64,000 nt of DNA from Haliotis rubra. Taxonomy: Eukaryota. The position numbers and the translations under genes were made by a program. Positions 4,120 to 63,916 of this stretch are shown here, piece by piece (positions within the stretch are counted from its first letter, which is position 1; each line of letters begins with the position of its first letter). The DNA is taken from positions 372,001 through 436,000 of the forward strand of contig NW_025767319.1 of assembly GCF_003918875.1 (NCBI RefSeq), written 5' to 3'. Below the pieces are notes generated by a model. The model searched no databases. It was given only the letters and a program-made list of their open reading frames with translations, and was not told where the DNA came from.

Positions 4120-4208
4120 GATCAAAGTAACATAGAAATCCAGCTGGGAGTCACATCAGCAGGCCTGGTGGTCTTCCAGAACAATGTCAAGATCAACACC
4201 TTTTCCTG
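4120..4208 (+). CDS. PTPN4: PTPN3/4 FERM-C exon (DQSNIEIQLGVTSAGLVVFQNNVKINTFSW)
   Basis: tgtag acceptor, tg|gtgagt donor, 89 nt, phase 0 to 2. Confidence 0.93.
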
Positions 4209-4252
4209 GTGAGTACCACAACACGTGTCTGCAGAATCAGGTGCCTATATTG

Positions 4253-4816
4253 TTATCCCCCGCAACGCGTTTTGCGGGGGGTATTAAAATGGACTCCGTC
4301 CGTCCGTCCGTGCACATTTGTCATTTCCGGAGCAGAACTCTAAAACCGTTTAATATTTCTTCACCAAACTTGGCACATACATAGATCTGGTGGTGTACTG
4401 GTGCCTTTTGGTAGTTTTCGAATTCTGAATAAAATATTTTTGGCGTTTCCATGGCAACAAGTTCGACTTAGACTGAAATTGGTGGTAGTGCTCTTTTCTG
4501 GAGCAGAACTCTAAAACCGTGCAATATGTCTTCACCAAACTTGGCACATAGATAGATCTGGTGGTGTACTGGTACCTTTTGTTAGTTTTGGAATTCTGAA
4601 TAAAATATTTTTGGCGTTTCCATGGCAACAAGTTTGACTTAGACTGAAATTGGTGATAGTGCTCCTTTCTGGAGCAGAACTTTCAAAACCTTTCAATACT
4701 CTCCTTCCACTTTTCTATATACACACCTAAATATTTGACATAATCATAACTCGTAGACATAATCATGAAGAGTATTTTGCCATTGCTGGGGATATTGATG
4801 ACTTTGTCTTCTTGTT
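4253..4816 (+). mobile_element. HINE-like element, second family, with 171-bp tandem units
   Basis: ttatcccccgcaa..ttgcggggg hairpin, (ccgt)n, two 171-bp units, ggggatatt..cttgtt end; related sequence at about 1-250. Confidence 0.7.
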
Positions 4817-6784: not shown

Positions 6785-6945
6785 AACGACAGTATTGAGA
6801 ATCTGATCGGCTTCAACATGATAAGCTACCGTTCATGCAAGAACCTATGGAAGTCATGTGTTGAACATCATACTTTCTTTCGCCTTCATCACCCAAACCC
6901 ACCATCCAAAAAGATCTTCTCAATAGGCTCCAAGTTCAGATATAG
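6785..6945 (+). CDS. PTPN4: PTPN3/4 FERM-C/FA exon (NDSIENLIGFNMISYRSCKNLWKSCVEHHTFFRLHHPNPPSKKIFSIGSKFRYS)
   Basis: ccag acceptor, ag|gtaaga donor, 161 nt; CKNLWKxCVEHHTFFRL and GSKFRY motifs. Confidence 0.96.
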
Positions 6946-12337: not shown

Positions 12338-12589
12338 GTCCCCCAGCAAGCGCTATGCACGCCGGACAGTGGGCGGGGTCAGCAGGGATGCTATACTAGA
12401 AGAGAAACGCTACATTGAGGGATACAGGAACCTAACTAAGTCACAAACATTCACCAGCAACTCCACCAACTCAACACACAACTTCAACCGCTACGATGGT
12501 GTGAACAGCCACACACGGGCCACACTCCCTCATGACTACAAGTCCAGGGCATCATGGAATGATGGAACAAGATCTGAAAAATCTGATGA
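12338..12589 (+). CDS. PTPN4: PTPN3/4 FA/linker exon (SPSKRYARRTVGG...TRSEKSD)
   Basis: cctgcag acceptor, ga|gtgagt donor, 252 nt open, phase 2 to 2; RSPSK continues the FA motif. Confidence 0.9.
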
Positions 12590-27625: not shown

Positions 27626-27820
27626 TCTTCGCCCAGTGAGCAGGATGTGAGAGCGCCTGTGTCTCCCTACACACTATATCCTTTGATTATTCTTATTTAG
27701 TTACCTCTTTTAGTCATCTATAGAGGTTTAGCTAGTATCCTTCAACATTATGTATTGATATTTATTCGTATTTCTGCTGTTTATTCACGGGACGCCGTGA
27801 TTGTTCAGTAGTTTACGTTG

Positions 27821-30175
27821 ATGAAAATCTGTACTGTTTGCAGGTTACGTTTTTCTGCTGCTGATCCGCATTTAATATGCCCTAGCTGTACTGCACCATG
27901 TTCATTTTCTTCACGTTGCAGTTACTGTAATAATTTGTCTAATTCTGCTTTTAACAAATATTTACTTTGCGTTTTGAGACGCGCAGCAGATAGGTCACGT
28001 AAGCAGAGTCTAGCCATGGCTGATACATCTGAACCCCTCGCCAGTCAACTGCTGTCGGACGACCCCCTCCCGTCTGGTGTTCCGCTAGAGTTACCCTCGG
28101 AGGAGAGGCGTGGGACGCAGTCCGCCGTCTCCAAGAAGCGTCCTGCATCCCCAGACATCCCGTCGTCGCAGCCGAAGACTAAGAGGGCTTCTACTTCAAC
28201 TCAACGCAGACTCCGCACCCCAGGGCAGCGTCTACCTCCAAGGGGAAATCGGCGAAGTCTACAAGGACTTTCTCAGCTGAGATTGTTCCGCCGCCAGAAC
28301 TGGGCCTGTATGATTATCAGCCGATCATCATACCTGATGTGCATCACAAGAAAGCGACCGGTGTCGGCAACAGTGGCGTCAGCGCGCAGATCTACACGCA
28401 GCCTGATGTACCAGCGCTGATGTCTGATGATCTTCCTGAGGGTCCCGTCGCTACCAACGCAGATAGGGCAGCAACTACATCTTCGCAGACCGTCCCAGAC
28501 GACCTGGTTCTTCAGATTATGAAGATGATGGAAGACCGCTACGGACTGGAGAGACAACCAGCCCAGAGCCTGAGCCTTACGAAGGCTCCAACGTAGACGT
28601 CACCCCAGAGGGACCCCCCCCATCAACGTAGCGGCTGCTACCAAGTCATCGCTGAGGAACCCACCTGCGCGAAGGACGTCACAGCCCACCTCTGCGAAGG
28701 ACCCAGATGTTCAGCGTTCGCGAAAGCCTTCGCGAAGGACATCTAGATCGTCACCTACCTCGGACTCCGATGATCAATGCTCACGAAGAGGTTCGCGAAG
28801 GAAGATCCTCTCATCCCCGGACTCTGACTCGGACCCCCAGCCTTCGCGAAGGTCAAGTCGTCACTCCCCAGGACCGGACTCAGATGAAGCTTCGCGAAGG
28901 GCACCAGTTACAGGCTCCAAGTCATCTTCGTCTAGAAGGTCATCGAGGGATTCCCCAAGAGCTTCGCAAAGCTATCATCGTTCACCACATAGATCTCCGC
29001 GAAGGTCACCATACAGACGCAGCTCGTCAGGCCGTTCTCCACGTCGATCTCCTCGCCGTTCTCCACGTCGATCTCCTCGTCGTTCACCTCGTCGATCTCC
29101 TCACAGGTCACCACATTGTTCGCCTCACAAGTCTTCACGGAAGTCCCCAGACAGGTCTCCATTGACGTCACCCTGCAGAGCTGTACAAGTATACAGGACT
29201 CCACCTCAGTCACCATCGGAAGAGCATCAACCTCTTATCAGCGATCCCGTTACAGAAGATGATGGAGGCATCATATACTCCGACGCAGAAATACGCTACT
29301 GGATGGTTAACAACCTGGACCTATCTTCACCTTCCAAGAACGGTAACCCGGCCCACACCTATCTCATGAGGGAGGACGGCGCGCAGACACGATCACCCTA
29401 CCTCCGATCGACCCGATAGCAGCGGTCCCACAGAATCTGGACACAGCCTTCCATAAAGCCACTAAAGCCCAGGCGCCGCACTTACCACAGTTCAACGCCA
29501 AAAAGTTCTCAGCCCATAATATGGACCCATTTTTCAAGGCACAATAAATCGACGATAACTTCAAAGTCATCAACGATGCCAAGACTAAGATGTACAAGAT
29601 AGACGACCGCAAGCTGGTTCAGATCGAAACCATGACAAGAAGAATGTTCTTCGGCCTTAACAGATCAAGAACGATTAATGAAACTCTCATCACCAGATTT
29701 CGAGATTCTACATCAGAAGACGACAGAATGATATACTCGGCCCTCCTTATGCAGAAGAAGGACCAGCAGTTTTTAACGGATCATCTTACATCAGTCTCCG
29801 CAGCGCTAACTCTGGCTCGTTGTCAAGGTCTCCTGCAGTTGGGGTGAACAGTTCACATCTTCACTCTACACAGCCCCGTGGTCTTTGCCGTCAATCTTCG
29901 CTGGAGGAATAGATAAAGTCTCTAAAGAAGTCACCAAGGATTCAAGGGAAGTCCTTATGATAAAGTTGATGTACACGCTAGCTAGCGTCATCAGGCAGAC
30001 ATCACAGAGATATTCAGGAAGATCAAAGTTTACTGGCTTACAGAAAGCACGGGACAGGAAGATGGCCGGTTCAAGAGGAGGAAAAGATTCTTTTCGTAAG
30101 CCCATCACGGCAACTACAGGGGGAGGATCTGGAAGAGGCAGAGCACCCAGAGGCTCCCGCAACTATAAGCGATGA
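27821..30175 (+). pseudogene. DIRS gag-like ORF1, frameshifted and with stops
   Basis: N-terminal Cys/His finger (CTVC..DPHLICPSC..CSYC), low-complexity middle, RG-rich C-terminus; split across several ORFs. Confidence 0.75.
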
Positions 30176-31914
30176 AAGGCGGTTTGAGCGACTGGAGTCT
30201 TCCACCCCAGCCGTTCCAGTACAACCATCACAAGTGGGTGGGCGCCTTCAACTGCACTGGGAGAACTGGGGAATTCTACAGGATCCATATGTCTCCAACA
30301 TCCTACAACACGGATATCGAATCCAACTACAGGCCATGCCTCCGCTTACAGTCAACCCTCACAAGTTCGACTTCCAGGCTCAACAACTACCAAAGTTACG
30401 AGAAGCTGTTTCATCTCTCCTAACCAAGCAGGCCATAGAAGTACTGGATCAAGTAAACATCGAACCAGGCTTCTACTCCCCAGTTTTCCTAGTGCCCAAG
30501 AAAAACTCCAAGGAAAAGTTCGACTCATCTACAACATGAGCACGTTCAGCAGAGATTATCTACGCCAAACCGTAGCGTTTGCATGATACATCTACCTCAA
30601 CTACTGCACCTAGTTTGTCCCATGGACTACATGGCCAGTATAGATCTGCAGGATGCTTATCTACATATCCCGATACATCCCGAATCCAGGAAATGCCTAC
30701 TGTTTACACTAGACGGGCTGCATTACCAATGGAGAGTACTGCCATTTGGAATATCATCGGCCCCCTGGTTGTTCAAAAGAGTAACGAAACCTATCGTCAC
30801 TTACCTACATCGTCAAGGGCTACGCAGTGCGTTCTACCTCGACGACGGGATTCAAGTAGATCAAGATCCACAGCGTCTCAAACTACAGTTAAACTTCATC
30901 ATCAAGCTACTAACGCAGCTAGGATGGTTAGTAAATCTACTCAAGTCGGACCTAGAACCTACGACAAGATCTGCAATTTCTAGGCGTTCGATTTCTCACG
31001 ACACAGAACCGTATCGTCGTACCGGAGGACCGATGGCTCAAGATCCAACAGACCATCCCACAAGCCTTACTCTCTCCGCTACCACTACGACAATGGCAGA
31101 GTCTGTTGGGTCTCCTCACGTCAGCCCAAGACATGAGAGTCAGAGGCAGACTACAGTTACGTCCGTTACAGGTCCTCATCAATGCTCATCTCGACGACCT
31201 ACAACCATTCAGTCTACCGAAGCACATCAGACCTCATCTACTATGGTGGACCAGGAGGTTGAATGTCTGTGAAGGCATCTATTTAACAGAGCCGGAATTC
31301 AAAACCCATCTCTATGTAGACGCGTCGCTCCAAGGTTGGGGAGCTCATCTCGCCAACTGGACGGCATCAGGGTTATTGAACCAGCAAGAGAGCAAGCTGC
31401 ACATAAACATGCTAGAAATGAAAGCAGTAATCAACGCCCTACTATATTGGAGCACCATTCTACAGAATGCGCATCTAATGATTCACACCGACAACTCAAC
31501 AGTGACGTTTTATATAAACAAACAAGGCTCAATGAGATCATTGAACCTATTGACTCTATGCTTTCAACTGTTCGATCTAATCGACGATCTCAACATACAT
31601 GTCAGAGCATGTCACATTCCTGGAGCCAAGAATGTACTAGCAGACGCACTCTCTCGGCCACATCTACCGTCACCGACAGAATGGATGCTCCATACAGAAA
31701 TCTTTGCACAGATTATCAAGGAAATAGGAGCTCCGCTAGTAGACCTATTCACCACTCGCTTCAACAATCAGCTAACAACATTCGTATCACCAGTCCTGGA
31801 TCCACAAGCGTGGGCAACGGACGCACTAAGCATATCCTGGGAAGGCCTCAACGCGAAGCGTTTCCGCCGCCAGCGCTAATTCCAAAGGTGTTACAGAAAA
31901 TAAAGTGTGTCTAA
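30172..31914 (+). pseudogene. DIRS reverse transcriptase - RNase H - truncated methyltransferase-like domain
   Basis: VGGRL..W, FYSPVFLVPKK, IDLQDAYLHIPI, LPFG, YLDD (30835-30846), VDAS..GWGA, HINMLE, TDN, N..ADALSR, DLF..AFPP; several frameshifts. Confidence 0.93.
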
Positions 31915-32961
31915 ACAAGAGAGGTTATTCAGCCAGAGCGGCGAAAGCAGTCACGCTTGCTTTACGCAGTTCTAGGCGCAACTTGTATGACGACAAGTGG
32001 CACAGTTTTGAGACATACGCTGTTAAAAAGGGATTTACAGCTAGAAATGCTACATATCCACAAGTGGCTGACTACCTTTGTTACCTACGACAAACTAAAC
32101 GTCTAAAAGGCTCGACATTGTCAACATATCTCGCAGCTCTAAGTTCAGTGATAACTATGAGAACGGGTGTCAAGTTAACTAAGACTCCAGAGTTACTGGC
32201 CTTGCTATGTTCATTCCGATTGGAGGATCAGAAACAGAGATTTCGCGCTCCAGCATGGGATCTAAATGTAGTGCTCCAACACCTCACAAGTGAGGCCTAT
32301 GAACCACTGGAATCAACATCGTTTGAATTTCTGACACAGAAAACATTGTTCCTGTTATCCCTAGCAATGGCAGCCAGAAATTCACGCTCTAGATTATGAG
32401 AAAACACGTTTCGATGACAATCAAAACATAGTGCATATGGGACTGCGATGGAACTTTATCGCCAAGAATCAATTGCCAGGTCAACCAGACAGATTATTCC
32501 ATATCCCTGCACTTTCCTCAATTTCTCGGACCTCATGATATGCTTGACCTATCATTATGCCCAGTGAGAGCACTCAAAATCTATCTACAACGATCCAAAA
32601 CGAGGCGACGACAACTCAAGCGGTTATTCACCCCTCTATCGACAGCGACTCAGACCGAAGTCTCTCGTACCACGATATCGATATGGATCAGAACTGTCAT
32701 ACTTCATGCCCAAGTAACAAGGCTGCAGGACTCAACCCTCCAAGAGCATCTACTCCCCATGAAATCAGAGCACTGGCTTCGACACCCGCTCTACACGGAA
32801 ATTGCTCGTTGAATACCATTATGGAGGGCTGCTTTTAGAAATCCGACATGGTGTTTGCTAACCACTATCTGAGGGATATCACCACCGAGGACGTCTCAGG
32901 TATTCACCATTTCAGTCCCATGGTCCTCGCACAGCAGTTGACAGTCCCTCGTAGACGATGA
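31905..32961 (+). pseudogene. DIRS tyrosine recombinase, frameshifted
   Basis: PAWDL..VL, KTLFLLSLA.AAR, LCPVRAL..Y, HEIRALAS, F.NHYLRD; in-frame TAG at 32836. Confidence 0.9.
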
Positions 32962-33335
32962 GACATAGTCTCACGAGATTATTCTGTATATATCATACCA
33001 GTATTATCTAGCTTATAACTCTACGGAGTTTTGTGCTAATTATATACATATCTTAAGTCTACATTAGTCTTAAGCCCAGTACTGATGTTACATGTACATT
33101 GGGTCGCTTCTCCACTTTGGAGTCGCTTTTATACTATTATTATTATTATCATATTATCTAAATATTGTAGTACCCCCATCTATGGCAGCTGGTAGAACTT
33201 ATGTATTATAGCAGCAGGAATTATCTTAATTACAGTGCCATTATGAAGTTCCCGTAGGAGGTTATTACATATATAAATCACTAATTATTTAAATCCAAAG
33301 TATTCTGTTTCCCACCTCCGTTTCCGTAGGATTCT

Positions 33336-44904: not shown

Positions 44905-45840
44905 GTATTCTGGTTATTTCGAATGATAGATGTTGTATCCTGGTTGTTCCCAACAGTAGGTGTTTTATCCTGGTTATTCCCAATGGTAGATGTTTTATCC
45001 TGGTTATTCCCAACAGTAGGTGTTTTATCCTGGTTCTTCCCAACAGTAGGTGTTTTATCCTGGTTCTTCCCAACAGTAGGTGTTTTATCCTGGTTATTCC
45101 CAATGGTAGATGTTTATCCTGGTTATTCCCAACAGTACATGTTTTATCCTGGTTATTCCCAACAGTAGGTGTTTCATCCTGGTTATTCCCAACAGTAAAT
45201 GTTTTATCCTCGGTATTCCCAACAGTAGGTGTTTTATCCTGGATAATCCCAACAGGAGGTGTTTTATCCTGGTTACTCCCAACAGTAGGTGTTTTATCAT
45301 GGATATTCCCAACAGTTGGTGTTTTAACCTCGGTATTCCCAACAGTAGGTGTTTTATCCTGGTTATTCCCAACAGTAGGTGTTTTATCCTGGTTATTCCC
45401 AACAGTAGGTGTTTTATCCTGGTTCTTCCCAACAGTAGGTGTTTTATCCTAGTTATTCCCAATGGTAGGTGTTTTGTCTTGGTTATTCCCAACAGTAGGT
45501 GTTTTATCCTGGTTATTCCCAACAGTAGGTGTTTTATCCTGGTTATTCCCAATAGTAGGTGTTTTATCCTGGATAATCCCAACAGGAGGTGTTTTATTCT
45601 GGTTACTCCCAACAGTGAGTGTTTTATCATGGATATTCCCAACAGTGAGTGTTTTATCCTTGGTATTACCAACAGTGGGTGTTTTATCCTGGTTATTCCC
45701 AACAGTAGGTGTTTTATCCTGGTTATTCCCAACAGTGGTGTTTTATCCTCGGTATTCCCAACAGTAGGTGTTTTATCCTGGTTACTCCCAACAATAGGTG
45801 TTTTATCATGGATATTCCCAACAGTAGGTGTTTTATCCTG
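44905..45840 (+). repeat. 30-bp minisatellite (cctggttattcccaacagtaggtgttttat), about 31 copies
   Basis: Direct reading. Confidence 0.97.
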
Positions 45841-46672: not shown

Positions 46673-46814
46673 TGATGGGGGTTTCTTGTCGCACAACACA
46701 TCACGGGACACATATCCGGCACCTGCTCCAACCAAGGTTGTTAACTTCAACTCCTCAGAAGAGAACACTAGATCGGATCAGTACTATGATATTCCTGCAT
46801 ATGAAGAGTATATT
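46673..46814 (+). CDS. PTPN4: PTPN3/4 linker exon (DGGFLSHNTSRDTYPAPAPTKVVNFNSSEENTRSDQYYDIPAYEEYI)
   Basis: tttctttcag acceptor, att|gtgagt donor, 142 nt, phase 2 to 0; bridges the phases of the 12589 donor and the 63827 acceptor. Confidence 0.8.
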
Positions 46815-47922
46815 GTGAGTATATGCGCTGTGTCATGTAACTATTAAGGCAACTCATATTATCTAATAATTCAATGTGCGTTCATTGTTAAGACTGACCA
46901 GTCCCGGCTACAGAAAATGATATGTTGTACAGCATAGTTGATGGAAGTCTGTTTTTGTGCAGTGTGTGAATGAATGTTCCCTTCCATGCACCAGACAGTA
47001 CACAGTAAAGAATTAATGAGTGGTGGGTTTATGGGGCATGCAGTACACTGGCTTGTGTGTCCAGGGAGGATTCCTGACATGGACAAACTGTTATCTAGAC
47101 TTTCTGTGCTGCATATTTAATGCTTAATACCTCCACAACTTCCATCATGACTACATCATTTAAGATGTGTTGGAGGAGACATTAGAAGTTGTTGCAGTAT
47201 CACAATCAGTACATGTTGTTTTATTTTTCATGTCAGGGTTTGTACCACAAGTTGGATGTCAGTGGTAGTAAACCAAGCAAGGCACACATGATGGTCATAA
47301 AACACATTTATAGAATTAATTAATTGAGTGTGCATGCTACACAAGAAAATATGGTAGCTTTTTCACTTGATAGTAAGAATATTGTAGGAGGTGGGAACCA
47401 CAGGAATGGAATGTCCTACTAAGAGTTGAGAAATAAGATTATGCATCAATATTGAGTGTTCAGGCACATTAGGTCTTGTCTGGAACGCTTTGTTTTTATC
47501 TCCCAGTAAGAGCCAAGCCTTGTCAACATCGATCCTCTTGGAGCTTGTCACCCTTGAAGTATGACAATTAACATTTGCTGCTTTATCCATTCATTTTATC
47601 AATTGAGACACAGTGTATGTGTGTTCATAGTGTCTTTCAATCTAATTATGCAAACATTTCAGAATTTTCCCCTTAATTGATTTTCACGCACATATTTTCC
47701 CAGTTTGGGAAGGAAATTGCTTTCCTCTAAGTGAGTAGAATAATTCAGTCATGAAAACAGCCCCTACACCATAGGGATTCACATAGCAATATTCCTGTTG
47801 TTACTGCCAGATCATAGAGCTATGATCTGAAGACAGTGTCAAGGATTTGCATACAACATTCAGTGTGTGTTGAAGGTGCCCCATATTATGAAAACAGTGC
47901 CCCACAATAGAGGATACCACAG

Positions 47923-48555
47923 ACTGAAGTGCTGTGTTGGACTGTGTGCCTGAAGTGCTGTGTTGGACTGTGTGACTGAAGTGCTGTGTTGGACTGTGTG
48001 CCTGAAGTGCTGTGCTGGACTGTGTGCCTGAAGTGCTGTGTTGGACTGTGTGCCTGAAGTGCTGTGTTGGACTGTGTGCCTGAAGTGCTGTGTTGGACTG
48101 TGTGCCTGAAGTGCTGTGTTGGACTGTGTGCCTGAAGTGCTGTGTTGGACTGTGTGACTGAAGGGCTGTGTTGGTCTGTGTGCCTGAAGTGCTGTGTTGG
48201 ACTGTGTGACTGAAGGGCTGTGTTGGACTGTGTGCCTGAAGTGCTGTGTTGGACTGTGTGACTGAAGTGCTGTGTTGGACTGTGTGCCTGAAGTGCTGTG
48301 TTGGACTGTGTGCCTGAAGTGCTGTGTTGGACTGTGTGACTGAAGGGCTGTGTGCCTGAAGTGCTGTGCTGGACTGTGTGCCTGAAGTGCTGTGCTGGAC
48401 TGTGTGCCTGAAGTGCTGTGTTGGACTGTGTGCCTGAAGTGCTGTGTTGGACTGTGTGCCTGAAGTGCTGTGTTGGACTGTGTGCCTGAAGTGCTGTGTT
48501 GGACTGTGTGCCTGAAGTGCTGTGTTGGTCTGTGTGACTGAAGTGCTGTGTTGGA
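47923..48555 (+). repeat. 26-bp minisatellite (ctgaagtgctgtgttggactgtgtg[c/a]), about 24 copies
   Basis: Direct reading. Confidence 0.97.
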
Positions 48556-49217
48556 GTATTGTGTGTGTGAAGTAATGTGTTGGTCTATGTGCATAAACTT
48601 TGTGTTGAAACCATGTGCCTGAAGTACTGTGTTTGACTGTGTTAGAGGTATTGTGTCAGATTTTGCTTGTAGTATTGTGTTGTACATTGCTGTATATACT
48701 CAATAGGAATGTGTGTATCGCCTATGAGAACACTGTCGTAATGGAGGACAGCCCAAACTGAAGGAAGTATTGTTTAAGTGGACTGTGTCAGTCAACTGAC
48801 TAGAACAGAAAGATGACTGTTTAGAAGTTTGATCCTCATGGGATTTGTTTGGGCAACTCTACAAGTTTTATCTTTTGTTTGTAAAAGTGCAAGTCTTTGT
48901 TCTTTGTTAACCATTAAGAGTAACATGATTAACATACATACTGTTATAACCAGAGCAGTCATGATGAGAAATCATGTGTCTTCGGTTGTTATTGGAGACA
49001 CAGGATTTATGATTTTGTTGATTAGAGTGTGTGAGGGGGATGTGGAGCAGTCTGTAATTAGAGGATGAAGTTACAGTCAGGTTACAGACAGTTGATGAGA
49101 TTAGGCCGTTGACAGACAGAAGGTGAATCAATACTAGTGTATATCTTCATTAGTATGGCCTGTCAAGATACCTTGAAAACAGGCACAAGAAACCACGACA
49201 TGGTGCTACATCTGCAG

Positions 49218-49698
49218 TAGAATACAGACAGGGGACAGCTGGGGTCAGTCCATGGTGATACAGGTAGTGTAGAATACAGACAGGGGACAGCTGGGATCAG
49301 TTCATGGTGGAACAGGTAGTGTAGAATACAGACAGGGGACAGATGGGGTCAGTCCATGGTGATACAGGTAGTGTAGAATACAGACAGGGGACATCTGGGG
49401 TCAGTCCATGGTGATACAGGTAGTGTAGAATACAGACAGGGATATCTGGGGTCAGTGCATGGTGATACAGGTAGTGTAGAATACAGACAGGGGACAGCTG
49501 GGGTCAGTCCATGGTGATACAGGTAGTGTAGAATACAGACAGGGGACAGCTGGGGTCAGTCCATGGTGATACAGGTAGTGTAGAATACAGACAGGGATAT
49601 CTGGGGTCAGTGCATGGTGATACAGGTAGTGTAGAATACAGACAGGGGACAGCTGGGATCAGTGCATGGTGGTTCAGGTAGTGTAGACTTTAGACAGG
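49218..49698 (+). repeat. 52-bp minisatellite, about 9 copies
   Basis: tagaatacagacagggg recurs every 52 bp. Confidence 0.97.
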
Positions 49699-51498: not shown

Positions 51499-53240
51499 TA
51501 CAAAGCTGTGTTTCTACTAATATAGACGTCCCTTCAAGGGGTATATTCTTGTTCTGTTTCTCCATTAGGACACTAATACATGATTTAAGTACACTCCAGT
51601 GTACATTATTTTCAGTTCAAAATATAATATACGAATATTATTTTCATTTGTGGCAAATCATATGCCTTTCACATACCTACCCTTATTTTGGCAAAAATAG
51701 TGACTTTTGAAATATTTTGCCTTCTACTAGAAACTCCATGAAATGCGATGGGCCTGTCCTTTGTAACAACTGCATAGTTTATGCCAAATAAAGACTTGTA
51801 TGGTTCTTATTCATGGTAATAGTTGTGAGTTCATAAAGGACAGTCTTGATATGTTGAAATGACATATCAGGATATCAAGTGTTTGGTAGATGTGGTTGTT
51901 TGGTAAGTGTTTAGCTTAGTGTCCTATGTCCAAGCTAATACACGTATCACTGACATGATATGGCCTGGCTTGTGTGTTGTTGCATGTGATTCATTGTTTG
52001 GGGTCGGGTGTGATGCAATGTGAAGAATGTGAGCTCTGGGGATAGTACAGACATTTTATTTCCCTATAAAGGAGTCCACAATGAAAATGTGCTGCTGGTA
52101 TCACGCAATGCTGGCTGAAATAATAACACTGGGTTTAATGTGTGGATGGGGTTACTCAGGGATTGTCCTACTTCACTTGACACATATATGAACTGAAGTA
52201 CGGAGACAATTATGCTGAGCATTTGATGTCTTGTAAAGTTGTTATTTGAATGAGGATTGGCAGATTTCCAAGCCCAACCCACTGCTTTGTGTCAGGTTGT
52301 AGGCGGGTACACACAGGACAACCGATCCCCACCCGCATTGTCAGCTAGTGCAGATGCAGCAAACTTACATTAAGTCTGTATGTTCCTCGAGTCTCTTGTG
52401 TCTGGGACAATCATGGATATTTTGATTTTTGACTTTCTGAAGACATTGAACATATATGAGAAAACTTACCTTCAGAAGTTATTTAACAATAAAATGAGTC
52501 GAGTTCGCACATCTATGAAGATACAACATGAATTTTGTATTTTAAGCTATTATCTTGAAATTGTATCCAATTTCATGCCAATACATTAATAGTTTCCCAA
52601 TAGGACTACTGATGTAAGGCAGAACTTGATAGAAGTATTGTGACATTGTCTCTACGAGACCTAAAGTGTCTCTAGATTGTGAGTGTTTCTCTACTGCACA
52701 TGAACCCTGTATCCACAAGATCTCACCTTTACTGTCATCATGAAGGGCACCTCGAGGGGCTATGTTTGGACAGTGATAAATGTCCAAGGCAGCCACACAT
52801 TTACTTGTGTCTTCTGTGAATGAATGAACATTCCTTAATGTGTCCGGACCCGAGACTATCATGACCTAAGAGGGACTAATATCTACAGCCTTATCAGCCC
52901 GGCCCTTCACAGGGTTCTCGTTTACCCCAGTTCTAAGTGATCTTAAACCTCCTTTTTTAAAAACCTGATTTGAAACATTAACCATACACAAATCCAAACA
53001 TTAGCTTACAATAGTCCCTTAATTACACTCAGTCAGGTTTGTTTTTAGTTTCAAATCCCTCCACAGATTTCACTTGTTAAATATTGTTAGAATTTGTTGA
53101 CTAATCAGCCTAGATGTAGACAATGGAGACAGAAATAGTTTATCCTTGCCCTGTGCTTGCCAGCATGGATTCTAACAAAATTGCCCAGTCAGGCTGATGA
53201 CAAGCAAATTAACAAACCCTGATTAATTAGTCATTTCATT

Positions 53241-53303
53241 ATGAGGGTCCCAAGCTGGTGGTTTGAGGTGAGTGAGCTGGCTTACCTTGCTGACCCACAC
53301 CAG
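53241..53303 (+). CDS. Candidate alternative first coding exon with two in-frame donors, MRVPSWWFE(VSELAYLADPHQ)
   Basis: attATG; gag|gtgagt after 53267 and cag|gtgagt after 53303, both phase 0, matching the PDZ exon. Confidence 0.5.
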
Positions 53304-55295
53304 GTGAGTGGAGTTCAGCCAACACAAGCCACCCTTCCTTGTTCCCTCTGGTATTCAGGAGCAGGGTACACTACCTCGCTATAGCACACAGCAATATTCA
53401 CATGTGTTACTTCTGTAGTGTTGCTGCTGTGGGGAAAAATTGTTCAAATTGGACAATTAATAGTTCATGTGAATTTTTTTTTATCAGAGGCTTTGCTGTT
53501 AGCTTGGAAACATTTTGCCTTATAAAGAATATAGCGACACTATCAGTATACATTTAAAATCCTGATGTTTTCATGAATGAAATGTGGGCATTGAATTTGA
53601 CTTCATGTAGGTAAACAAGCCAGTAATGCATTATTGACAGATATAATTTTGGATATGTAGAAGCCTTTGTATGACATAACCTAAAAATAGCATTCAGGTA
53701 AGGAGTTAGGAGCCATACCACAGAGCCAGCGAGGTAGCGCACGTCACAGTTGGTGTATTGTGTTATGAATGTATGCAGGGTCGTGTCACTGGTCTACATA
53801 CAGGCCTGGTAGAGTGAGGCTGTCTCTTTAAACGCTAGACATCTACCAGGATCAGGGGCTCCGGTAGGGGCCTTACAACTCCACTGAAGCGGGGATCCCA
53901 GGCAGGATCATGAGACATAGGCAGAAGGGATTAGGACAGTCGGGATAGTCCACAACTGAAGCCTGACTGCACTGAACAGTGTCACCGATTACTGAGAGGA
54001 CTGCCAAAGACTGGGATATTGCTGTCTTATCAAGGGACCAAGCTTACTTGAACAGCAATAATGGAAGTACATCATTCTTTTCATTCCCCTAAAGTATTCA
54101 AATATGGTTTTGTGCGGACAGACCTGTGATGTATGGAATTGGACAGCTATAAGACTGTATGTATTCAGGGGTGCTTGAAACTGGATTCACTGAGGGTCAA
54201 GTGATTATATAAGTGTGGATCCGGAATGTGTGTTTCAATGGTGTAACCCACATTGACACTCGTTTATAGCAGAGTGCATTCCATGCATGACATCAGTAAG
54301 ACTAGAATCTGTCAAGGGGCCTGTTGAAGTCGTCTGTCAGCAATAGCAGTGAAGTTTTTAGTTGTAAAAGTCTGCAATAGCCCTGATCAGCTGCCTGGGC
54401 TTAAAGTCTGTGTCAGCGTAGTCATAGTGAGAGAGGTGTGCCCTGATTGTCTCATCAAAATGTACAAAGCTTTCCTGTAAAGTAAAAATGGCCTTACTTG
54501 ATTCAGCTGACTTTACAGAGTTTGTAACGGCTGGATAATTGTTTTCAAGAGGTGACTAGCTGGGGAAAAGTTGCCTGGACAGTGTGTTGTGTGATCCCCC
54601 CTGTTGTGGACTATACTGCTGATAGATTGGATACATTGGATGATACCCAAACCTTTCCACAATTCAGAAGAGGATTTTGTTTTGAATCGATAACAAGGTT
54701 TTCATAGCAGGAAGGGATATCCCTGTGACAGGACTAACCACTTGCTCTGCCAGATAATGCAGAGTCTATAAAAGGAATTACAGATATTTATTACACAAGA
54801 TAACGCGTCCCTTATTTTGTGTGACACTTGGCTAATGTGGGACACAAGTTAAGGAAGGTGTTTGTGAAAGATGTGGAGTGGTTTTAATAGAAAAGTTGTG
54901 TCATGAGAATGTGGGTGTTTGTGTCATCTCTTCTGACAACTGTTCAAGCATTGGAGGAAAACATAGCATGTCAACACAAGTAGATGTTTGACTTCAAATT
55001 GGATCAAGTAATTGACGTAATATGCATCAACTGGCAAACACAAGAGCTTGTTCAGCTTAAGAACAGGTTATGATTATCAACAATATTCAGGTTTACGTAT
55101 GTGATTACTCCAGATACAGCCATTGTTAACATACCTAAGGATTACTGTGTAAGAATATACCATCCAGGTGTCGAAGGTTGTACTGCTCAGTTTGAAGCAA
55201 GTGGGCAAAGGGATTGATTGTATGGTAAGAAAATATAATTTTTGGGTATATAGAAACATTTTAGAGAGGATCTTGTGGTGTCCCCACTTAAACTG

Positions 55296-56570
55296 ATGGT
55301 GGTCACAGAGATGGTGGTGTTTATGGCGAGTCCATTTGAGCGTGGATCACAGGCTTTTAGGAAGGAGCAAGTGTTCCAGCTTGTCCGATCCAGAAGTGTC
55401 AGACACTCTGTAAAAACTGGCAGTGGTGAAATTGTGACGACTCAAAATGGAGTTCAGCCCGAGTCTGCTGGGAAGAGAGGAGACACAAAGCCGGAAAACA
55501 GTGTGGTGCAGGAGAAAATTTCACCAAGAAGGGTTGCTAATGGTTCAGTCCAGACTGGTCTTTATTCTCGAAGTAGGCATAAAAGCTTCGAGCATTTACC
55601 CACCTCCCAAACTGTGCATGATGATTATAAGGTCCTACAGTCTTCCAGTTCTGTAGATTCTGAATTAGATAAAACAGATTCATCAGAACAATCTGATAAG
55701 AAAGTTTTACCAATGATACTTAAAAAGAAAATCAAAGTTATACGAGGGAAAAAGGGCTTTAGAATAATTTCAGGTGACAAGGGACGTTCATCTATTAGTG
55801 CTCAAAGACGCTCCTTATTAAGTGCTAATGAAGAAGTGCTCACACAAAGTGCTCAAAGCAGACCTGAATCAACAGTCTCTGTATCTGATCTCACTCATAG
55901 CCATGACAAGTCTGTTGCTCGACGTAGTAGTGATCATCCACATGTGCCAAAAACTACAACAGAAGTTGATAAAGGAAAAGGAACCAAGTCACGAGTTTCA
56001 TGGTTGGACCAGGAAAAACATCCTCAATTCCAGGCAAAGCTATTGGCTGAGCATCTTCCTCAGTCAAATGTTTTGCCAAAGAAAGACAAGGTGAAAAAGT
56101 CAGTTAAATTTCAGCTAGACAAAATAGAAAGTGATCAGTTAAAATACATTGGAGATAAAGTGTGTGTTGGACAGAGTGATAGTGAACTGATGCAAGTTCC
56201 CCGGGAAACAGGGTTCCAGCTGATAGGGGTTCAGAGAGATTCTTCAGTGGAGAGATTGAAGAGAGATGTAGAGAACCGACTACATGTGGATGGAAAGACC
56301 CATTCTGATGGAGGTGAAAAGAAGGAAAATAGTTTCACTGTGAAGCCTGTTGGAACATCCCAAAGATTGCTCAGATCTGGTGCCTCTTTTTCTGGTGTTA
56401 CAAAACAGTCTCTAACAAAGGAGAAGGTAGTTTCAGGATTTGTGCGTAGGAACAGCATCAAATCCCTTCAACCAGCCGAGCATCAGGACAGCAAGCTGGT
56501 TGTACGAAGATGTGTTATTGGAGGTGCCCTTACATTCAGAGTTGTTCAGCTTCCACCTGCATATGAAGGA
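55296..56570 (+). CDS. Large alternative exon (~425 codons, K/S/R-rich, probably disordered) in frame with the PDZ exon
   Basis: 1.3-kb stop-free non-repetitive ORF in AT-rich intron; gga|gtaagt phase-0 donor 36 nt before the ORF end; in-frame ATGs at 55296/55311/55323; TATAAAAGG at 54767. Confidence 0.72.
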
Positions 56571-59500
56571 GTAAGTGAGGGCTATTTCAGGGATGTTGGC
56601 AGATGAGTAGAACTTAAGAAGGAAGTGTTTTTTAACAATTACTTCTGTCAAGATAAATGCATTCATCTGGGAACACTTGAGCTCCTAGTGTTCTTTGGTG
56701 TGCTGTATGTAATTGATTGAAATATTTAAGTGACATGTTGTTATCTGCCATAAGACATGCAGGTTTGCCTGGAGTCATAGAAAACTGTCAGTCATTGCCT
56801 GTGTTCATTATAGGAACTACATTGACATTGTTCAACGCTAGCTAGTGTCTTTACATGTATGAAACCTCCAGACCAGCCTTGATATGGTCCAAGTTGATTT
56901 GACCAGTGTCAACTGATCAGTTATTTGAGGTATGATGGAAATGTAGGGGTTGAGGGAAGTTTAGTAAACTGTGGCCAGTGTGTGTCAGGCTGACTGTCAC
57001 CTCACTGACCTAGCTATACATCAGACTTAATGATACTAAAAACAATCAGTGTTTAAACTTAGCTTTGGAGGTTATTGTTTAAGATATGAAAGAAATATGT
57101 GTCTAGTTTCAAGCAGAGTGAGTGATGTTCAGTTTGTCCATGACACATGCCATGTTAATGTAGGCTGACACAAGCATGACACATGTTCTGATCATGCCCC
57201 ACCTCCAAGAGTGGACCTGCTGCCACACATTCACTCCTACCTTCAGTCACAAATACCTATGTTCCTACTTAATGTCTTTTTCATTCAGTGTGAAGTTTTT
57301 CTTTATGTAATTCAAGGAGTAATAGTTGAATTAGAACGTTCCATCTGTTCTGGATGATTAGGTCTGTTTCTTCTTGTGGTAAAGAATGTGTCTCCAACTG
57401 AACATTGCAGGTGGGCGTAAGCAGATGTGTATAGCAAATGTTACTCACCTTATACTTCCGTTTACATGGGCTTTCTATTGTCATGTTTTTATTAGTTCTC
57501 AGTAGCATTTACATAGAATACAAATGCTCAGTGCAGTGTAGTGGTAATAATTTGAAAGCCATGTTGAGTATACGTTAGCATTGTGTAATGTCAATGAGTT
57601 GTATGATACATGCCCTGCATGCAGGGCTTCTGTATGTCAGGGGTATTTATAGAGGGCATTAAGTAAGGTGAATCTGGTATGTCGGACATGCAGACAGGGA
57701 GATGGTTGCCGGATTACATGTGACTGGCTTTGTGCGGTTGAGGCTGGCGCCTCTCCCAGCTCTACCTGCACCGATCAACTATGTGGCAGGAATTCACCAG
57801 GTCAGCGTCTACATTCAGTGAAGGGACATTTATAAGCATGACATGCATGCAGATATATCATGTCATACACAGTGTTTTGCAGTCGAGCTTTATTTATGAT
57901 GCCTGTAAATATACCAGCTGAGGTCTCACATAAATGAAGGAAATAAATTCTGTCAGCTGAGGTTATGAACATGAAGTTTAATCTTCTTCATTATATTTTC
58001 CTCAAAGCTGTCTTTCCTGTTAGTTTGCACAGTTCAGATATTGCTCACTGAATTGATTTTTCTGAATGCTTCCTTTCCTATAAGCAGTGTTCTGCCTTGC
58101 AACCACAAAACGGCCTGCAAGAAATTACAGGGCTTAAAAGAGTTGACAAACTAACTGGAGAAGTCATGTGGGTTAGATAAACTGATTTGTGTGTGTAGCT
58201 GCCATTGGATGATAGGGCAAGCAACTTCAGCGGTCTCATGTCTAGCTTTCTCCATCAGTGGACTCGCAAAGGAAGAGTACTTTCATCAATGTCATTCCCT
58301 TGGCACAATACCTCTTCATCTTATGAGGCCAGATTGATAATAGAAGAAGGAAGCATAAAGCCTAGCATAGAGACTCCTTGAAAGTTTTATCACAGTTTGA
58401 TATTAAATGAGGACTCATTAATTCAATCACTATTCCCTACTTGTTCACACTGGCTGTTTGTATTTCGAGATGCCTCTAAAACTGGCAGATTATTGTGGAT
58501 TTAGGCCTGGACATTGATGATTGTCATAAATCCTGTTTAGGAGGACATGTGGACAGAGCTGGGACATCCCTTCCTTGTCACATCTGTCCCCTTGTCAGGT
58601 TGGCCTTGTCTGGCCACAGGACCACTATCATCACTGGACAAACACTTCGTCTTCCATTGTCTGAAACAAAAACTCGAAACATTTATGGTTAGCTTATGGT
58701 TGTTGATTCTTTCAATTAGGAGAAAGGTTTGCTAGTAATCCTTCATTTATTATGGGATTTGTTGGTCCATTGGGCAGCAACTTATTGTACATTGGTCAGT
58801 GAAGCCTCAGTGGATCTTCAGATGGTGACAGAATGGTCAGCCGTAGCCTGTATTTGAGTTTCACAATGGATGGTGGGTGCTGTTGGTGGGATTACCATGA
58901 TTGAAAGCCATTCAGCCAGGATAATGAGCGTATCAACACTCAGTAGTAACAGCTTGTTGATCATCGGACATAGTTCACAGTCACACTTAGGAAATCTATC
59001 ATATTCTGAGAGTTGGACATCCTGTCTTCTTACACATTTCAAAGAATAATGAATACAGACCCTTGAAAGAATGTTTTCAGAAGGGTTGTATCTGGACCTG
59101 CTCAGTGGCTGATGTTCGACCCCTTCATCTACAGTTAGTGTCTGTGGAAATGCAAACTTGTAATTAAATGTTTCCCAATTCAAGTTAATATAGCTATGAC
59201 TAATCTTTTCTCTTTCTTATGTTACATCTCAAATAAGAATGAAGATGCTTATTTTACATTATTGCATTGAATACAATGCTAGAATACCTCAAAATTTAGG
59301 ACAATAAACAGTTTCCCTGCCAAGGTATCTTAGTTTGGAATCCCAGATAAATCTGTGGCAACCTGTCTGTCTGTATACCTTTCTGGAGCATCATCATCAC
59401 CACTCTGTTCCTGCTTCTTTCACAACATTAGGCTGCCTGTTGGTACTTTCTACTGGTTGGGATAGGTTTTTGTGTTAATTTTTATAGGTAGAGTTGATGG

Positions 59501-63826: not shown

Positions 63827-63916
63827 TCTAATGGGAATGGTTATGCTGATGGACATGGGCTGGTTACCATCAGGATGACACCAGACGACTTGGGCAGGTT
63901 CGGCTTCAATGTCAAG
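63827..63916 (+). CDS. PTPN4: PTPN3/4 exon starting the PDZ domain (SNGNGYADGHGLVTIRMTPDDLGRFGFNVK)
   Basis: tttgtttcag acceptor, aag|gtcagt donor, 90 nt, phase 0; LVxIRMxPD..GRFGFNVK is the PTPN3/4 PDZ start. Confidence 0.94.

What the first reader, a model, noticed from the sequence alone, without database searches (positions are those of the whole stretch)
55265..56570. Hidden 1.3-kb exon with PP1-docking and WW-binding motifs fused to PDZ-PTP
Seen: the longest ORF in the window, with a phase-0 GTAAGT donor right after ..QLPPAYEG. It contains KSRVSW and KKSVKF (RVxF-type PP1 motifs), basic clusters and PPAY (PPxY). The constitutive linker exon also has KVVNF and ends ..IPAYEEYI. A weak phase-2 acceptor (cattttag|55265) would alternatively make it mutually exclusive with exon 46673. 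Inference: an isoform that could couple a tyrosine phosphatase to PP1 and to WW-domain proteins.
Basis: partly seen in the sequence, partly recalled or inferred. Interest (0 to 1): 0.72.

Follow-up and report, generated by a model that had tools for sequence, protein, structure and literature searches.

The report
Orphan first exon on abalone phosphatase
Inside a long intron of an abalone PTPN3/4-type tyrosine phosphatase gene lies a transcribed 425-codon reading frame with no known relatives; it is spliced in frame onto the PDZ-phosphatase part, but as an alternative first exon, not a cassette exon, and the proposed PP1 and WW docking roles are not supported beyond chance.

Summary
55254-56603 (+) is the longest open frame in the window, at 450 codons; 100 simulated windows reached at most 209. 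It shows codon periodicity (p=3e-10) that its flanks lack. It opens 14 codons before the first ATG (55296) and closes 11 codons after a GGA|GTAAGT donor at 56570.

Contigs from two runs of one study (flagged only as "RNA?") run collinear with the genome from about 53.86 kb to 56570. They then continue with 30 letters that match only 63827-63856, the first PDZ exon. The 56570>63827 junction is therefore real and in phase 0.

A relative has a 1-nt deletion at 55268. The unit is therefore an alternative first exon from an internal promoter, giving a FERM-less isoform: orphan basic disordered region, then PDZ, then PTP.

No homologue was found in Pfam, in 1.84 billion representative proteins, or in the animal's own genome.

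RVxF matches are at chance level (2 seen, 0.68 expected). PPAY is a single motif. Its DNA (13 nt, P-A-Y-E) is shared with the constitutive linker exon, which reads IPAY, not PPxY.

Translation is not shown (24 upstream ATGs), and selection in relatives could not be measured. The scan holds a second note on this same stretch and none on other DNA.

The parts
53772..55295 (+). 5' leader of the alternative first exon. The 5' end is approximate: contigs start at 53859 in organism A and 53772 in organism B, and one run has a contig starting at 55006.
   Evidence: table 8: contigs are collinear with the genome, have no loose end at their 5' side, and there is no RNA-type coverage at 53000-53770; stops in all three frames and 24 ATGs between 53859 and the first in-frame ATG; no codon periodicity; single copy in the genome.
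55296..56570 (+). Coding part of the alternative first exon: 425 codons from the first in-frame ATG to the donor. Further in-frame ATGs lie at 55311 and 55323. It encodes an orphan, basic (net +25), Ser/Val/Lys-rich region predicted to be disordered.
   Evidence: open frame and its significance. (periodicity chi2 55.8, p=3e-10; composition). (AF2 single-sequence mean pLDDT 38). (no relatives).
56571..56576 (+). GTAAGT splice donor, phase 0. The frame closes 11 codons further on, at the TGA at 56604-56606.
   Evidence: Its use is shown by the loose ends at 56570 in runs X1 and X3.
63827..63916 (+). First PDZ exon (SNGNGYADGHGLVTIRMTPDDLGRFGFNVK), the acceptor target of the new exon and of the constitutive exon.
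   Evidence: ttgtttcag|TCT; the 30 loose letters of the contigs match only 63827-63856. The PDZ domain continues in L003:484-675 (Pfam PDZ, 2.4e-13).
46673..46815 (+). Constitutive linker exon that the new exon replaces. It shares the 13-mer CCTGCATATGAAG (46794-46806, against 56556-56568), which encodes P-A-Y-E. The 13-mer ends 9 nt before this exon's donor and 2 nt before the new exon's donor.
   Evidence: Longest common word is 13. P=0.007 against codon-shuffled sequence. The best match to any other piece of the window is 11.
55986..56003 (+). KSRVSW, an RVxF-type match. It resembles KSRASWND of the constitutive exon 12338-12589.
   Evidence: KSRVSWLD against KSRASWND, 6/8 identities, E=0.10 for the single comparison, which is marginal.
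56094..56111 (+). KKSVKF, an RVxF-type match inside the basic cluster KKDKVKKSVK.
55722..55757 (+). KKKIKVIRGKKG, the core of the strongest basic-hydrophobic cluster. The 20-residue window from residue 135 has net charge +9 and is preceded by an acidic Ser-rich patch.
   Evidence: This cluster has the highest single-sequence AF2 confidence in the region (blocks at 52-64), predicted as a hairpin.
55257..55265 (+).
   Evidence: contigs of X1, X3 and X5 cross it without a joint, and X18 has a 1-nt deletion at 55268.

Best explanation
An internal promoter sits in the 17-kb intron between the last linker exon (46673-46815) and the first PDZ exon (63827) of an abalone FERM-PDZ-PTP (PTPN3/PTPN4-type) gene. 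It drives a transcript whose first exon runs from about 53.8 kb to 56570, possibly with further starts nearer the frame. After a long leader, that exon carries a 425-codon reading frame (ATG 55296). The frame is spliced in phase 0 to the PDZ exon. The product would lack the FERM domain and the constitutive linker. In their place it would carry a lineage-restricted, basic, Ser-rich, disordered N-terminal region in front of an intact PDZ and catalytic domain.

Shown: transcription, the 56570>63827 junction, in-frame continuity, the statistical coding signature, and the absence of relatives. Inferred: translation from 55296, and the role of the region.

The most likely role is an alternative targeting or regulatory module for the same PDZ-PTP core, for instance electrostatic membrane or nuclear targeting through the KKVLPMILKKKIKVIRGKKG cluster. 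Taken together with that, the gene would swap N-terminal localisation modules by promoter choice.
For: Gene context: FERM_C hits at window 4120-4263 and 6785-6901. PDZ at L003:484-675 and the PTP domain at L003:3648-4022. The VHC / SAGIGRTG catalytic signature is intact, read exon by exon. All lie on the + strand of one contig.

Transcript: the 2730-nt X1 contig is collinear with 53859-56570. Its 30 loose letters match only 63827-63856. X3 shows the same junction. Neither run has depth at 53000-53800 or beyond 56600, so the signal is neither genomic DNA nor bulk pre-mRNA. Four runs of that study hold 0.67-0.68 of the stretch's words.

Coding signature: 450 open codons against a maximum of 209 in simulations. 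The frame is bounded tightly by the first ATG (42 nt inside) and the donor (33 nt inside). Codon periodicity gives chi2 55.8, against 5.4 in the leader and 2.5-3.9 in the intron.

Constraint: in the DNA-like relative X18, all 8 deletions within 53000-56610 lie outside the frame (P about 0.03). X1 and X3 differ in length by exactly 12 nt within 55006-56570. Of six substitutions that separate the window from all four runs, 3 are synonymous, against 24% expected; this is not significant.
Against: The leader holds 24 upstream ATGs if the start is near 53.86 kb, which would hamper scanning to 55296. The true start site is not mapped, and contigs cannot show it.

X1-X4 are only guessed to be RNA, and both junction-bearing runs come from one study.

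Overall divergence of the leader-plus-frame piece (3.4% in X18, 7.1% in X5) equals that of the downstream intron (3.6% and about 6.9%). No strong purifying selection is therefore visible at this resolution.

Whether the frame is open in organisms B and D could not be read, because the tables were truncated.

In organism B the contig reads through the donor to 56911.

No protein evidence exists, and no relatives exist, so nothing independent says the product is functional.
Confidence: 0.68

Rival explanations
1. Independent unspliced gene. The transcript mostly ends downstream of the frame without splicing and encodes a stand-alone protein of about 436 aa (ATG 55296 to TGA 56604) that has nothing to do with the phosphatase. 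The spliced form is a minor by-product.
For: In organism B (X5) the 3265-nt contig runs through the donor to 56911. The frame closes only 11 codons after the donor.
Against: In organism A both laid runs end exactly at 56570 and continue with the PDZ exon, and depth beyond 56600 is zero. No AATAAA or ATTAAA lies in 56607-56911. X5 also has patchy cover of the downstream intron (57487-58996), as expected for pre-mRNA. The donor is a perfect GTAAGT in phase with the PDZ exon.
Confidence: 0.1
2. Transcribed but not translated. The RNA is an alternative-promoter or regulatory transcript of the phosphatase gene. The long frame is not read by ribosomes, so any protein would start further downstream or not at all.
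For: There are 24 upstream ATGs in the leader. No homologue exists anywhere. Nucleotide divergence is like that of the intron. AF2 sees no fold.
Against: A 450-codon open frame is about 1e-13 per site by chance. It shows codon periodicity absent from its flanks. It is bounded by an ATG and by the donor that is actually used. Deletions in a relative avoid it. A frame with no function would not stay open at this length.
Confidence: 0.14
3. Cassette or mutually exclusive internal exon. The donor at 12589 (phase 2) splices to the weak acceptor at 55265, so the region is inserted between FERM and PDZ in place of exon 46673.
For: The motif cattttag|A at 55264/55265 is in frame with the phase-2 donor at 12589. 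Contigs drop rare variants, so a minor form cannot be excluded.
Against: Contigs of three runs cross 55265 collinear with the genome, with no joint or loose end there. Organism D has a 1-nt deletion at 55268, downstream of that acceptor and upstream of the first ATG, which would shift the frame in the cassette form only. The polypyrimidine tract is poor.
Confidence: 0.05
4. SLiM scaffold. The region docks PP1 through KSRVSW and KKSVKF, and WW-domain proteins through PPAY, coupling Tyr and Ser/Thr dephosphorylation.
For: Both RVxF-type matches have the usual basic-before, acidic-after context, and they lie in a region predicted to be disordered. PPxY is rare in shuffles (P=0.004). FERM phosphatases of the PTPN14 type do use linker PPxY motifs to bind WW tandems (PMC6744271).
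Against: Two RVxF matches against 0.68 expected give P=0.16. The constitutive counterparts are KSRASW, which is not an RVxF, and IPAY, which is not a PPxY. What is shared is KSRxSW and PAYE, not the docking consensus. Conservation in relatives was not readable, and there is no binding data.
Confidence: 0.08

Closest known systems
PTPN3 (PTPH1) / PTPN4 (PTP-MEG1) / Drosophila Ptpmeg: FERM-PDZ-PTP non-receptor tyrosine phosphatases (PMC2602985, PMC9900141)
   Same: The host gene has FERM, one PDZ and one PTP domain in that order on one strand, with an intact HC-SAGIGRTG signature. The new exon is joined to the first PDZ exon.
   Different: The isoform described here drops the FERM domain and the constitutive linker. 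It replaces them with a 425-aa region that has no detectable relative in any searched collection. I found no paper describing such an N-terminus for this family.
Alternative-promoter isoforms of classical PTPs that swap or drop N-terminal targeting parts (for example PTPROt, PTPRR isoforms, SHP1 promoter variants; PMC9900141)
   Same: The logic is the same: an internal promoter and a new first exon are spliced to a shared downstream exon, so one catalytic core receives different N-termini.
   Different: Here the new first exon encodes a very long orphan disordered region rather than a few residues, and its leader is unusually long and rich in ATGs.
PTPN14 / PTPN21 / Drosophila Pez: FERM phosphatases whose linker PPxY motifs bind the WW tandems of KIBRA and YAP (PMC6744271)
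   Same: This is a tyrosine phosphatase with a disordered region carrying a PPxY-type motif (PPAY).
   Different: PTPN14 has no PDZ domain and uses closely spaced paired PPxY motifs. Here there is a single PPAY at the exon end, and the paralogous constitutive position reads IPAY. There is no sequence homology.
RVxF-type PP1-interacting proteins (established knowledge; ELM-type consensus [RK]-x(0,1)-[VI]-{P}-[FW])
   Same: There are two consensus matches in a disordered basic context.
   Different: The count is not above chance. No further PP1-docking element was looked for (none was scanned for here), and there is no conservation or binding evidence.

Membership tests
PTPN3/PTPN4-type (FERM-PDZ-PTP) phosphatase gene (host gene) | N-terminal FERM domain | tested here: met
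   Pfam FERM_C matches on the same contig and strand at G000:C2429:376120-376263 and 378785-378901, which are window 4120-4263 and 6785-6901.
PTPN3/PTPN4-type (FERM-PDZ-PTP) phosphatase gene (host gene) | Single PDZ domain between FERM and PTP | tested here: met
   L003:484-675 gives Pfam PDZ at 2.4e-13 and 50.7 bits. It is preceded by exon 63827-63916..LVTIRMTPDDLGRFGFNVK.
PTPN3/PTPN4-type (FERM-PDZ-PTP) phosphatase gene (host gene) | C-terminal classical PTP domain with the HCxxGxxR(S/T) catalytic loop | tested here: met
   Y_phosphatase scores 116.5 to 120.5 bits. The sequence ..TIVHC at the exon end is followed by SAGIGRTG in the next exon, read exon by exon and not joined.
Alternative first exon (internal promoter) | The transcript's 5' end lies inside the intron, with no splice from upstream exons into the unit | tested here: met
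   Contigs of X1 and X5 begin at 53859 and 53772 without loose ends. There is no depth upstream and no joint at 55265. Contigs cannot map the exact start, so the precise start site is inferred.
Alternative first exon (internal promoter) | Donor spliced to a shared downstream exon, in frame | tested here: met
   Loose ends at 56570 in X1 and X3 equal 63827-63856. Both sides are in phase 0.
Cassette / mutually exclusive internal exon | Use of an acceptor at its 5' side (55265) | tested here: not met
   No joint or loose end at 55265 in any of three RNA-type runs. Organism D has a 1-nt deletion at 55268. A rare form is not excluded, because contigs drop rare variants.
Protein-coding exon under selection | Frame kept open and dN/dS below 1 in related species | tested here: inconclusive
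Only partial data were available. Organism D has no deletion inside the frame against 8 outside it. Organism A shows a 12-nt length difference. Fixed differences are 3 synonymous and 3 non-synonymous.
PP1-interacting protein (RVxF docking) | RVxF consensus present more often than chance, or conserved | tested here: not met
   Two matches against 0.68 expected in 2000 shuffles give P=0.16. Conservation could not be read.
PP1-interacting protein (RVxF docking) | Binding to the PP1 catalytic subunit that depends on the motif | not testable with these tools
   This needs co-immunoprecipitation or a pull-down with motif mutants.
WW-domain ligand (PPxY) | PPxY motif in an accessible region | tested here: met
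   PPAY lies at residues 420-423, and 0.004 of shuffles reach one match. However, the homologous position of the constitutive exon reads IPAY.
WW-domain ligand (PPxY) | Binding to a WW domain | not testable with these tools
   This needs a binding assay.

The most novel reading that the evidence does not exclude
A young, abalone-restricted coding exon arose inside an intron of a deeply conserved phosphatase gene. Its 3' end would have been copied from the constitutive linker exon (the shared 13-nt P-A-Y-E element at both donors, and KSRxSW in the same order). It would now give the PDZ-PTP core a new disordered N-terminus whose short motifs recruit PP1 and/or WW proteins, creating a combined Tyr plus Ser/Thr phosphatase complex that exists in no other animal.
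Probability: 0.06. Interest if true: 0.65.

Novelty: new variant of a known kind. Interest (0 to 1): 0.36.

Why it matters
The finding shows how a conserved signalling enzyme can gain a large, lineage-specific N-terminal region through an intronic promoter and an orphan reading frame. Together they suggest that this abalone gene makes at least three N-terminal versions (FERM, lipid anchor, basic disordered region) of one PDZ-PTP core. That makes it a tractable case for studying the birth of orphan exons and localisation switching by promoter choice. For annotation, it adds an isoform that homology-based gene finders cannot see. It does not by itself establish a PP1 or WW link.

Tried and rejected
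1. Homology. All of these gave nothing: Pfam, a word-index search limited to proteins of 240-760 aa, an exhaustive HMMER search of 1.84 billion representatives, ESM Atlas features (best 0.80, within the range of shuffled sequences), a six-frame search of the animal's own genome, and Rfam and tandem-repeat scans of 53000-57500. The frame is therefore not a transposon gene, a retrocopy or a known domain. A transposon origin is also rejected because both the frame and the leader are single copy.

2. Structure. Single-sequence AF2 gave a mean pLDDT of 38. This is too poor for a fold search, so none was run.

3. Homology to the constitutive linker. BLASTP found only KSRVSWLD against KSRASWND (E=0.10), and nothing for exon 46673. 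MAFFT of the exon ends was not informative. Only the 13-nt identity stands.

4. dN/dS and frame integrity in relatives. This was not achievable.

5. Full-length orthologues, to ask whether PAYE and KSRxSW are conserved in other animals. This was not attempted. All comparisons here were made exon by exon.

6. Literature. No description was found of a comparable N-terminal isoform of PTPN3/4 or Ptpmeg.

7. A poly(A) signal for an unspliced form. No AATAAA or ATTAAA lies in 56607-56911.

Full report
THE OBSERVATION

On the + strand the frame 55254-56603 is open for 450 codons. It is the longest open frame in the window; the next, at 307 codons, belongs to a retroelement.
- The sequence ..QLPPAYEG is followed by GGA|GTAAGT, so the exon would end at 56570 in phase 0.
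- KSRVSW, KKSVKF, PPAY and the basic clusters are present.
- The constitutive exon 46673-46815 encodes ..TKVVNF.. and ends ..IPAYEEYI|GTGAGT.
- A motif cattttag|A at 55264/55265 would be in frame as a phase-2 acceptor.

The frame is not a chance event. One hundred first-order Markov simulations of the window gave a mean longest frame of 152 codons and a maximum of 209. The local stop probability of 0.066 per codon gives about 5e-14 for 450 open codons. The three codon positions differ strongly in base composition (chi2 55.8, p=3e-10; G-rich and T-poor at position 1, C-poor at position 3). The 1275 nt before the frame and two 1275-nt intron pieces after it show nothing (chi2 5.4, 3.9, 2.5). The frame opens 14 codons before the first in-frame ATG (55296; others at 55311 and 55323) and closes 11 codons after the donor. 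Its limits therefore coincide with a start codon and a splice site.

THE HOST GENE

Pfam FERM_C matches lie at window 4120-4263 and 6785-6901. The exon at 63827-63916 encodes ..LVTIRMTPDDLGRFGFNVK. The next exon, just beyond the window (L003:484-675), is a PDZ domain (2.4e-13). A Y_phosphatase domain follows at L003:3648-4022 and 4191-4352. Its catalytic loop..VHC / SAGIGRTG.., is intact when read exon by exon. The gene is therefore a FERM-PDZ-PTP gene of the PTPN3/PTPN4 (Ptpmeg) type. The window covers the end of the FERM domain, the linker and the first PDZ exon. All comparisons were made exon by exon.

EXPRESSION AND SPLICING

One search found four small runs of one study (X1-X4, organism A, about 50 million letters of contigs each, flagged "RNA?") that hold 0.67-0.68 of the stretch's words. 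It also found larger DNA-like runs, and runs of related organisms B, C and D with smaller shares. I laid X1, X3, X5 (organism B) and X18 (organism D, DNA-like, even depth) on 53000-58999.

In X1 a 2730-nt contig is collinear with 53859-56570 and then carries 30 loose letters. X3 has a 1583-nt contig over 55006-56570 with the same 30 loose letters. Those letters match the window once, with no mismatch, at 63827-63856.

In X1 and X3 there is no depth at 53000-53800 or beyond 56600. That excludes genomic DNA and bulk pre-mRNA as the source. A processed DNA copy is excluded because the stretch is single copy in the genome.

No contig has a joint or loose end at 55265; three runs cross it. The 5' ends of the contigs (53859 in A, 53772 in B) carry no foreign letters. 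The unit is therefore an alternative first exon fed by a promoter inside the intron, not a cassette exon. It excludes exon 46673 because the two belong to different transcripts that share the acceptor at 63827.

Organism D has a 1-nt deletion at 55268. That lies after the proposed acceptor and before the first ATG, so it is harmless to an ATG-initiated frame and fatal to the cassette reading.

Two caveats apply. Both junction-bearing runs come from one study, and their RNA nature is inferred. Contigs also cannot place the start site. With a start at 53.86 kb the leader holds 24 ATGs. X3's frame-bearing contig begins at 55006, which would leave four.

In organism B the contig reads through the donor to 56911, with patchy cover of the following intron. 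I read this as pre-mRNA or intron retention, because no AATAAA or ATTAAA follows the stop. An unspliced product remains a rival.

RELATIVES AND CONSTRAINT

The 425- to 435-aa product has no Pfam family. The word-index search found no hit among proteins of 240-760 aa. The exhaustive search of 1.84 billion representatives found none. The genome's own six-frame translation gave no match except itself. The ESM Atlas gave no convincing neighbour (best 0.80). It is an orphan as far as these tools can see.

Evidence on selection is thin. In X18 the listed deletions account for all deleted letters of the piece 53000-56610. All eight fall outside 55296-56570; 2.9 would be expected inside, giving P about 0.03. 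The insertions were not listed. X1 and X3 are exactly 12 nt shorter somewhere in 55006-56570, a multiple of three.

Six substitutions separate the window from all four runs inside the frame. Three are synonymous (24% expected); this is not significant. Against constraint, overall divergence of the leader-plus-frame piece equals that of the intron (3.4% against 3.6% in D; 7.1% against about 6.9% in B). Whether the frame is open in B and D could not be read.

THE ENCODED REGION

The composition is S 13%, V 11% and K 10%, with a net charge of +25. An acidic Ser-rich patch (residues 106-134) precedes the strongest basic-hydrophobic cluster, KKVLPMILKKKIKVIRGKKG, which has +9 net charge over 20 residues. 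A second basic cluster is KKDKVKKSVK. Single-sequence AF2 gives a mean pLDDT of 38 with only short hairpins or helices. This is consistent with disorder, although a single-sequence model is weak evidence.

THE MOTIFS

The loose RVxF consensus matches twice (RVSW, KSVKF), against 0.68 expected in 2000 shuffles (P=0.16). That is not more than chance, although both sites have the usual basic-then-acidic flanks. PPxY matches once (P=0.004), but the test is post hoc.

More telling is a 13-nt identity, CCTGCATATGAAG (P-A-Y-E), between the 3' end of the new exon (56556-56568, 2 nt from its donor) and the 3' end of the constitutive exon (46794-46806, 9 nt from its donor). Codon-shuffled controls reach 13 in 0.7% of trials anywhere in the sequence. 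The constitutive exon's best match to any other piece of the window is 11.

In addition, KSRVSWLD resembles KSRASWND of the constitutive exon 12338-12589 (E=0.10 for the single comparison), and the two lie in the same order. The two alternative routes to the PDZ exon therefore share KSRxSW...PAYE. The constitutive versions (RASW, IPAY) do not fit the PP1 or WW consensus. This points to partial common descent or to a shared constraint next to the PDZ domain, not to PP1 or WW docking.

HOW IT MOST LIKELY WORKS

An intronic promoter produces a FERM-less isoform made of an orphan basic disordered region, then PDZ, then PTP.
- Shown: the transcript, the junction and the frame.
- Inferred: translation, and that the region acts as an alternative targeting or regulatory module.

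Given the polybasic-hydrophobic cluster, I favour electrostatic membrane targeting, or else nuclear targeting, as a replacement for FERM-mediated cortical binding.

COMPARISON WITH WHAT IS KNOWN

The host gene passes the membership tests for the PTPN3/4 type. Alternative-promoter isoforms with different N-termini are well known among classical PTPs (PMC9900141). PPxY-to-WW coupling is known for the PDZ-less FERM phosphatase PTPN14 (PMC6744271). I found no report of a comparable orphan N-terminal region on a PTPN3/4-type enzyme. I therefore class this as a new variant of a known kind, of moderate interest. The PP1/WW scaffold idea remains an untested minority reading.

Noticed in passing
window 27800-33000 (+): A GC-rich (0.48-0.53) retroelement sits inside the phosphatase intron. 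Open frames carry RVT_1 (30493-31269, 5e-14) and RT_RNaseH (30956-31876, 7e-9), split over overlapping frames, so it is probably decayed. The element type was not determined.
   Followed up: partly
window 44906-45840; 47924-48642; 49217-49500: Three intronic satellites: period 30 (31 copies, 88% matches), period 26/52 (about 28 copies of 26 nt) and period 52 (5.5 copies). They produce long spurious open frames on both strands and the GC-skew spike at 48-50 kb.
   Followed up: partly
L003:8600-9930 (G000:C2429:444600-445930): A tandem array with a period of about 85 nt lies downstream of the PTP exons. It is seen as a ladder of identical 40-aa frames, MLKTVRCYVAYSENQCMESCRVPSRRLRDVKDSEVLCSLQ.
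   Followed up: no
window 12338-12589 and 46673-46815: The constitutive linker exons carry KSRASW, TKVVNF and PAYEEYI. YEEY resembles the acidic Tyr motifs preferred by Src-family kinases and SH2 domains (my own knowledge, not tested). Whether these are conserved linker motifs of PTPN3/4 is unknown.
   Followed up: no
window 54765-54775 and 53735-53750: A consensus-like TATAAAAG lies at 54767, inside the transcribed leader, and could be a second start region. A CACGTCAC (CRE/E-box-like) element lies just upstream of the 5' ends of the contigs. Neither was tested.
   Followed up: no
window 56610-56650: Organism D (X18) lacks 39 nt just downstream of the exon, in the intron and after the stop that closes the frame. 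This shows that indels are frequent immediately outside the frame.
   Followed up: no
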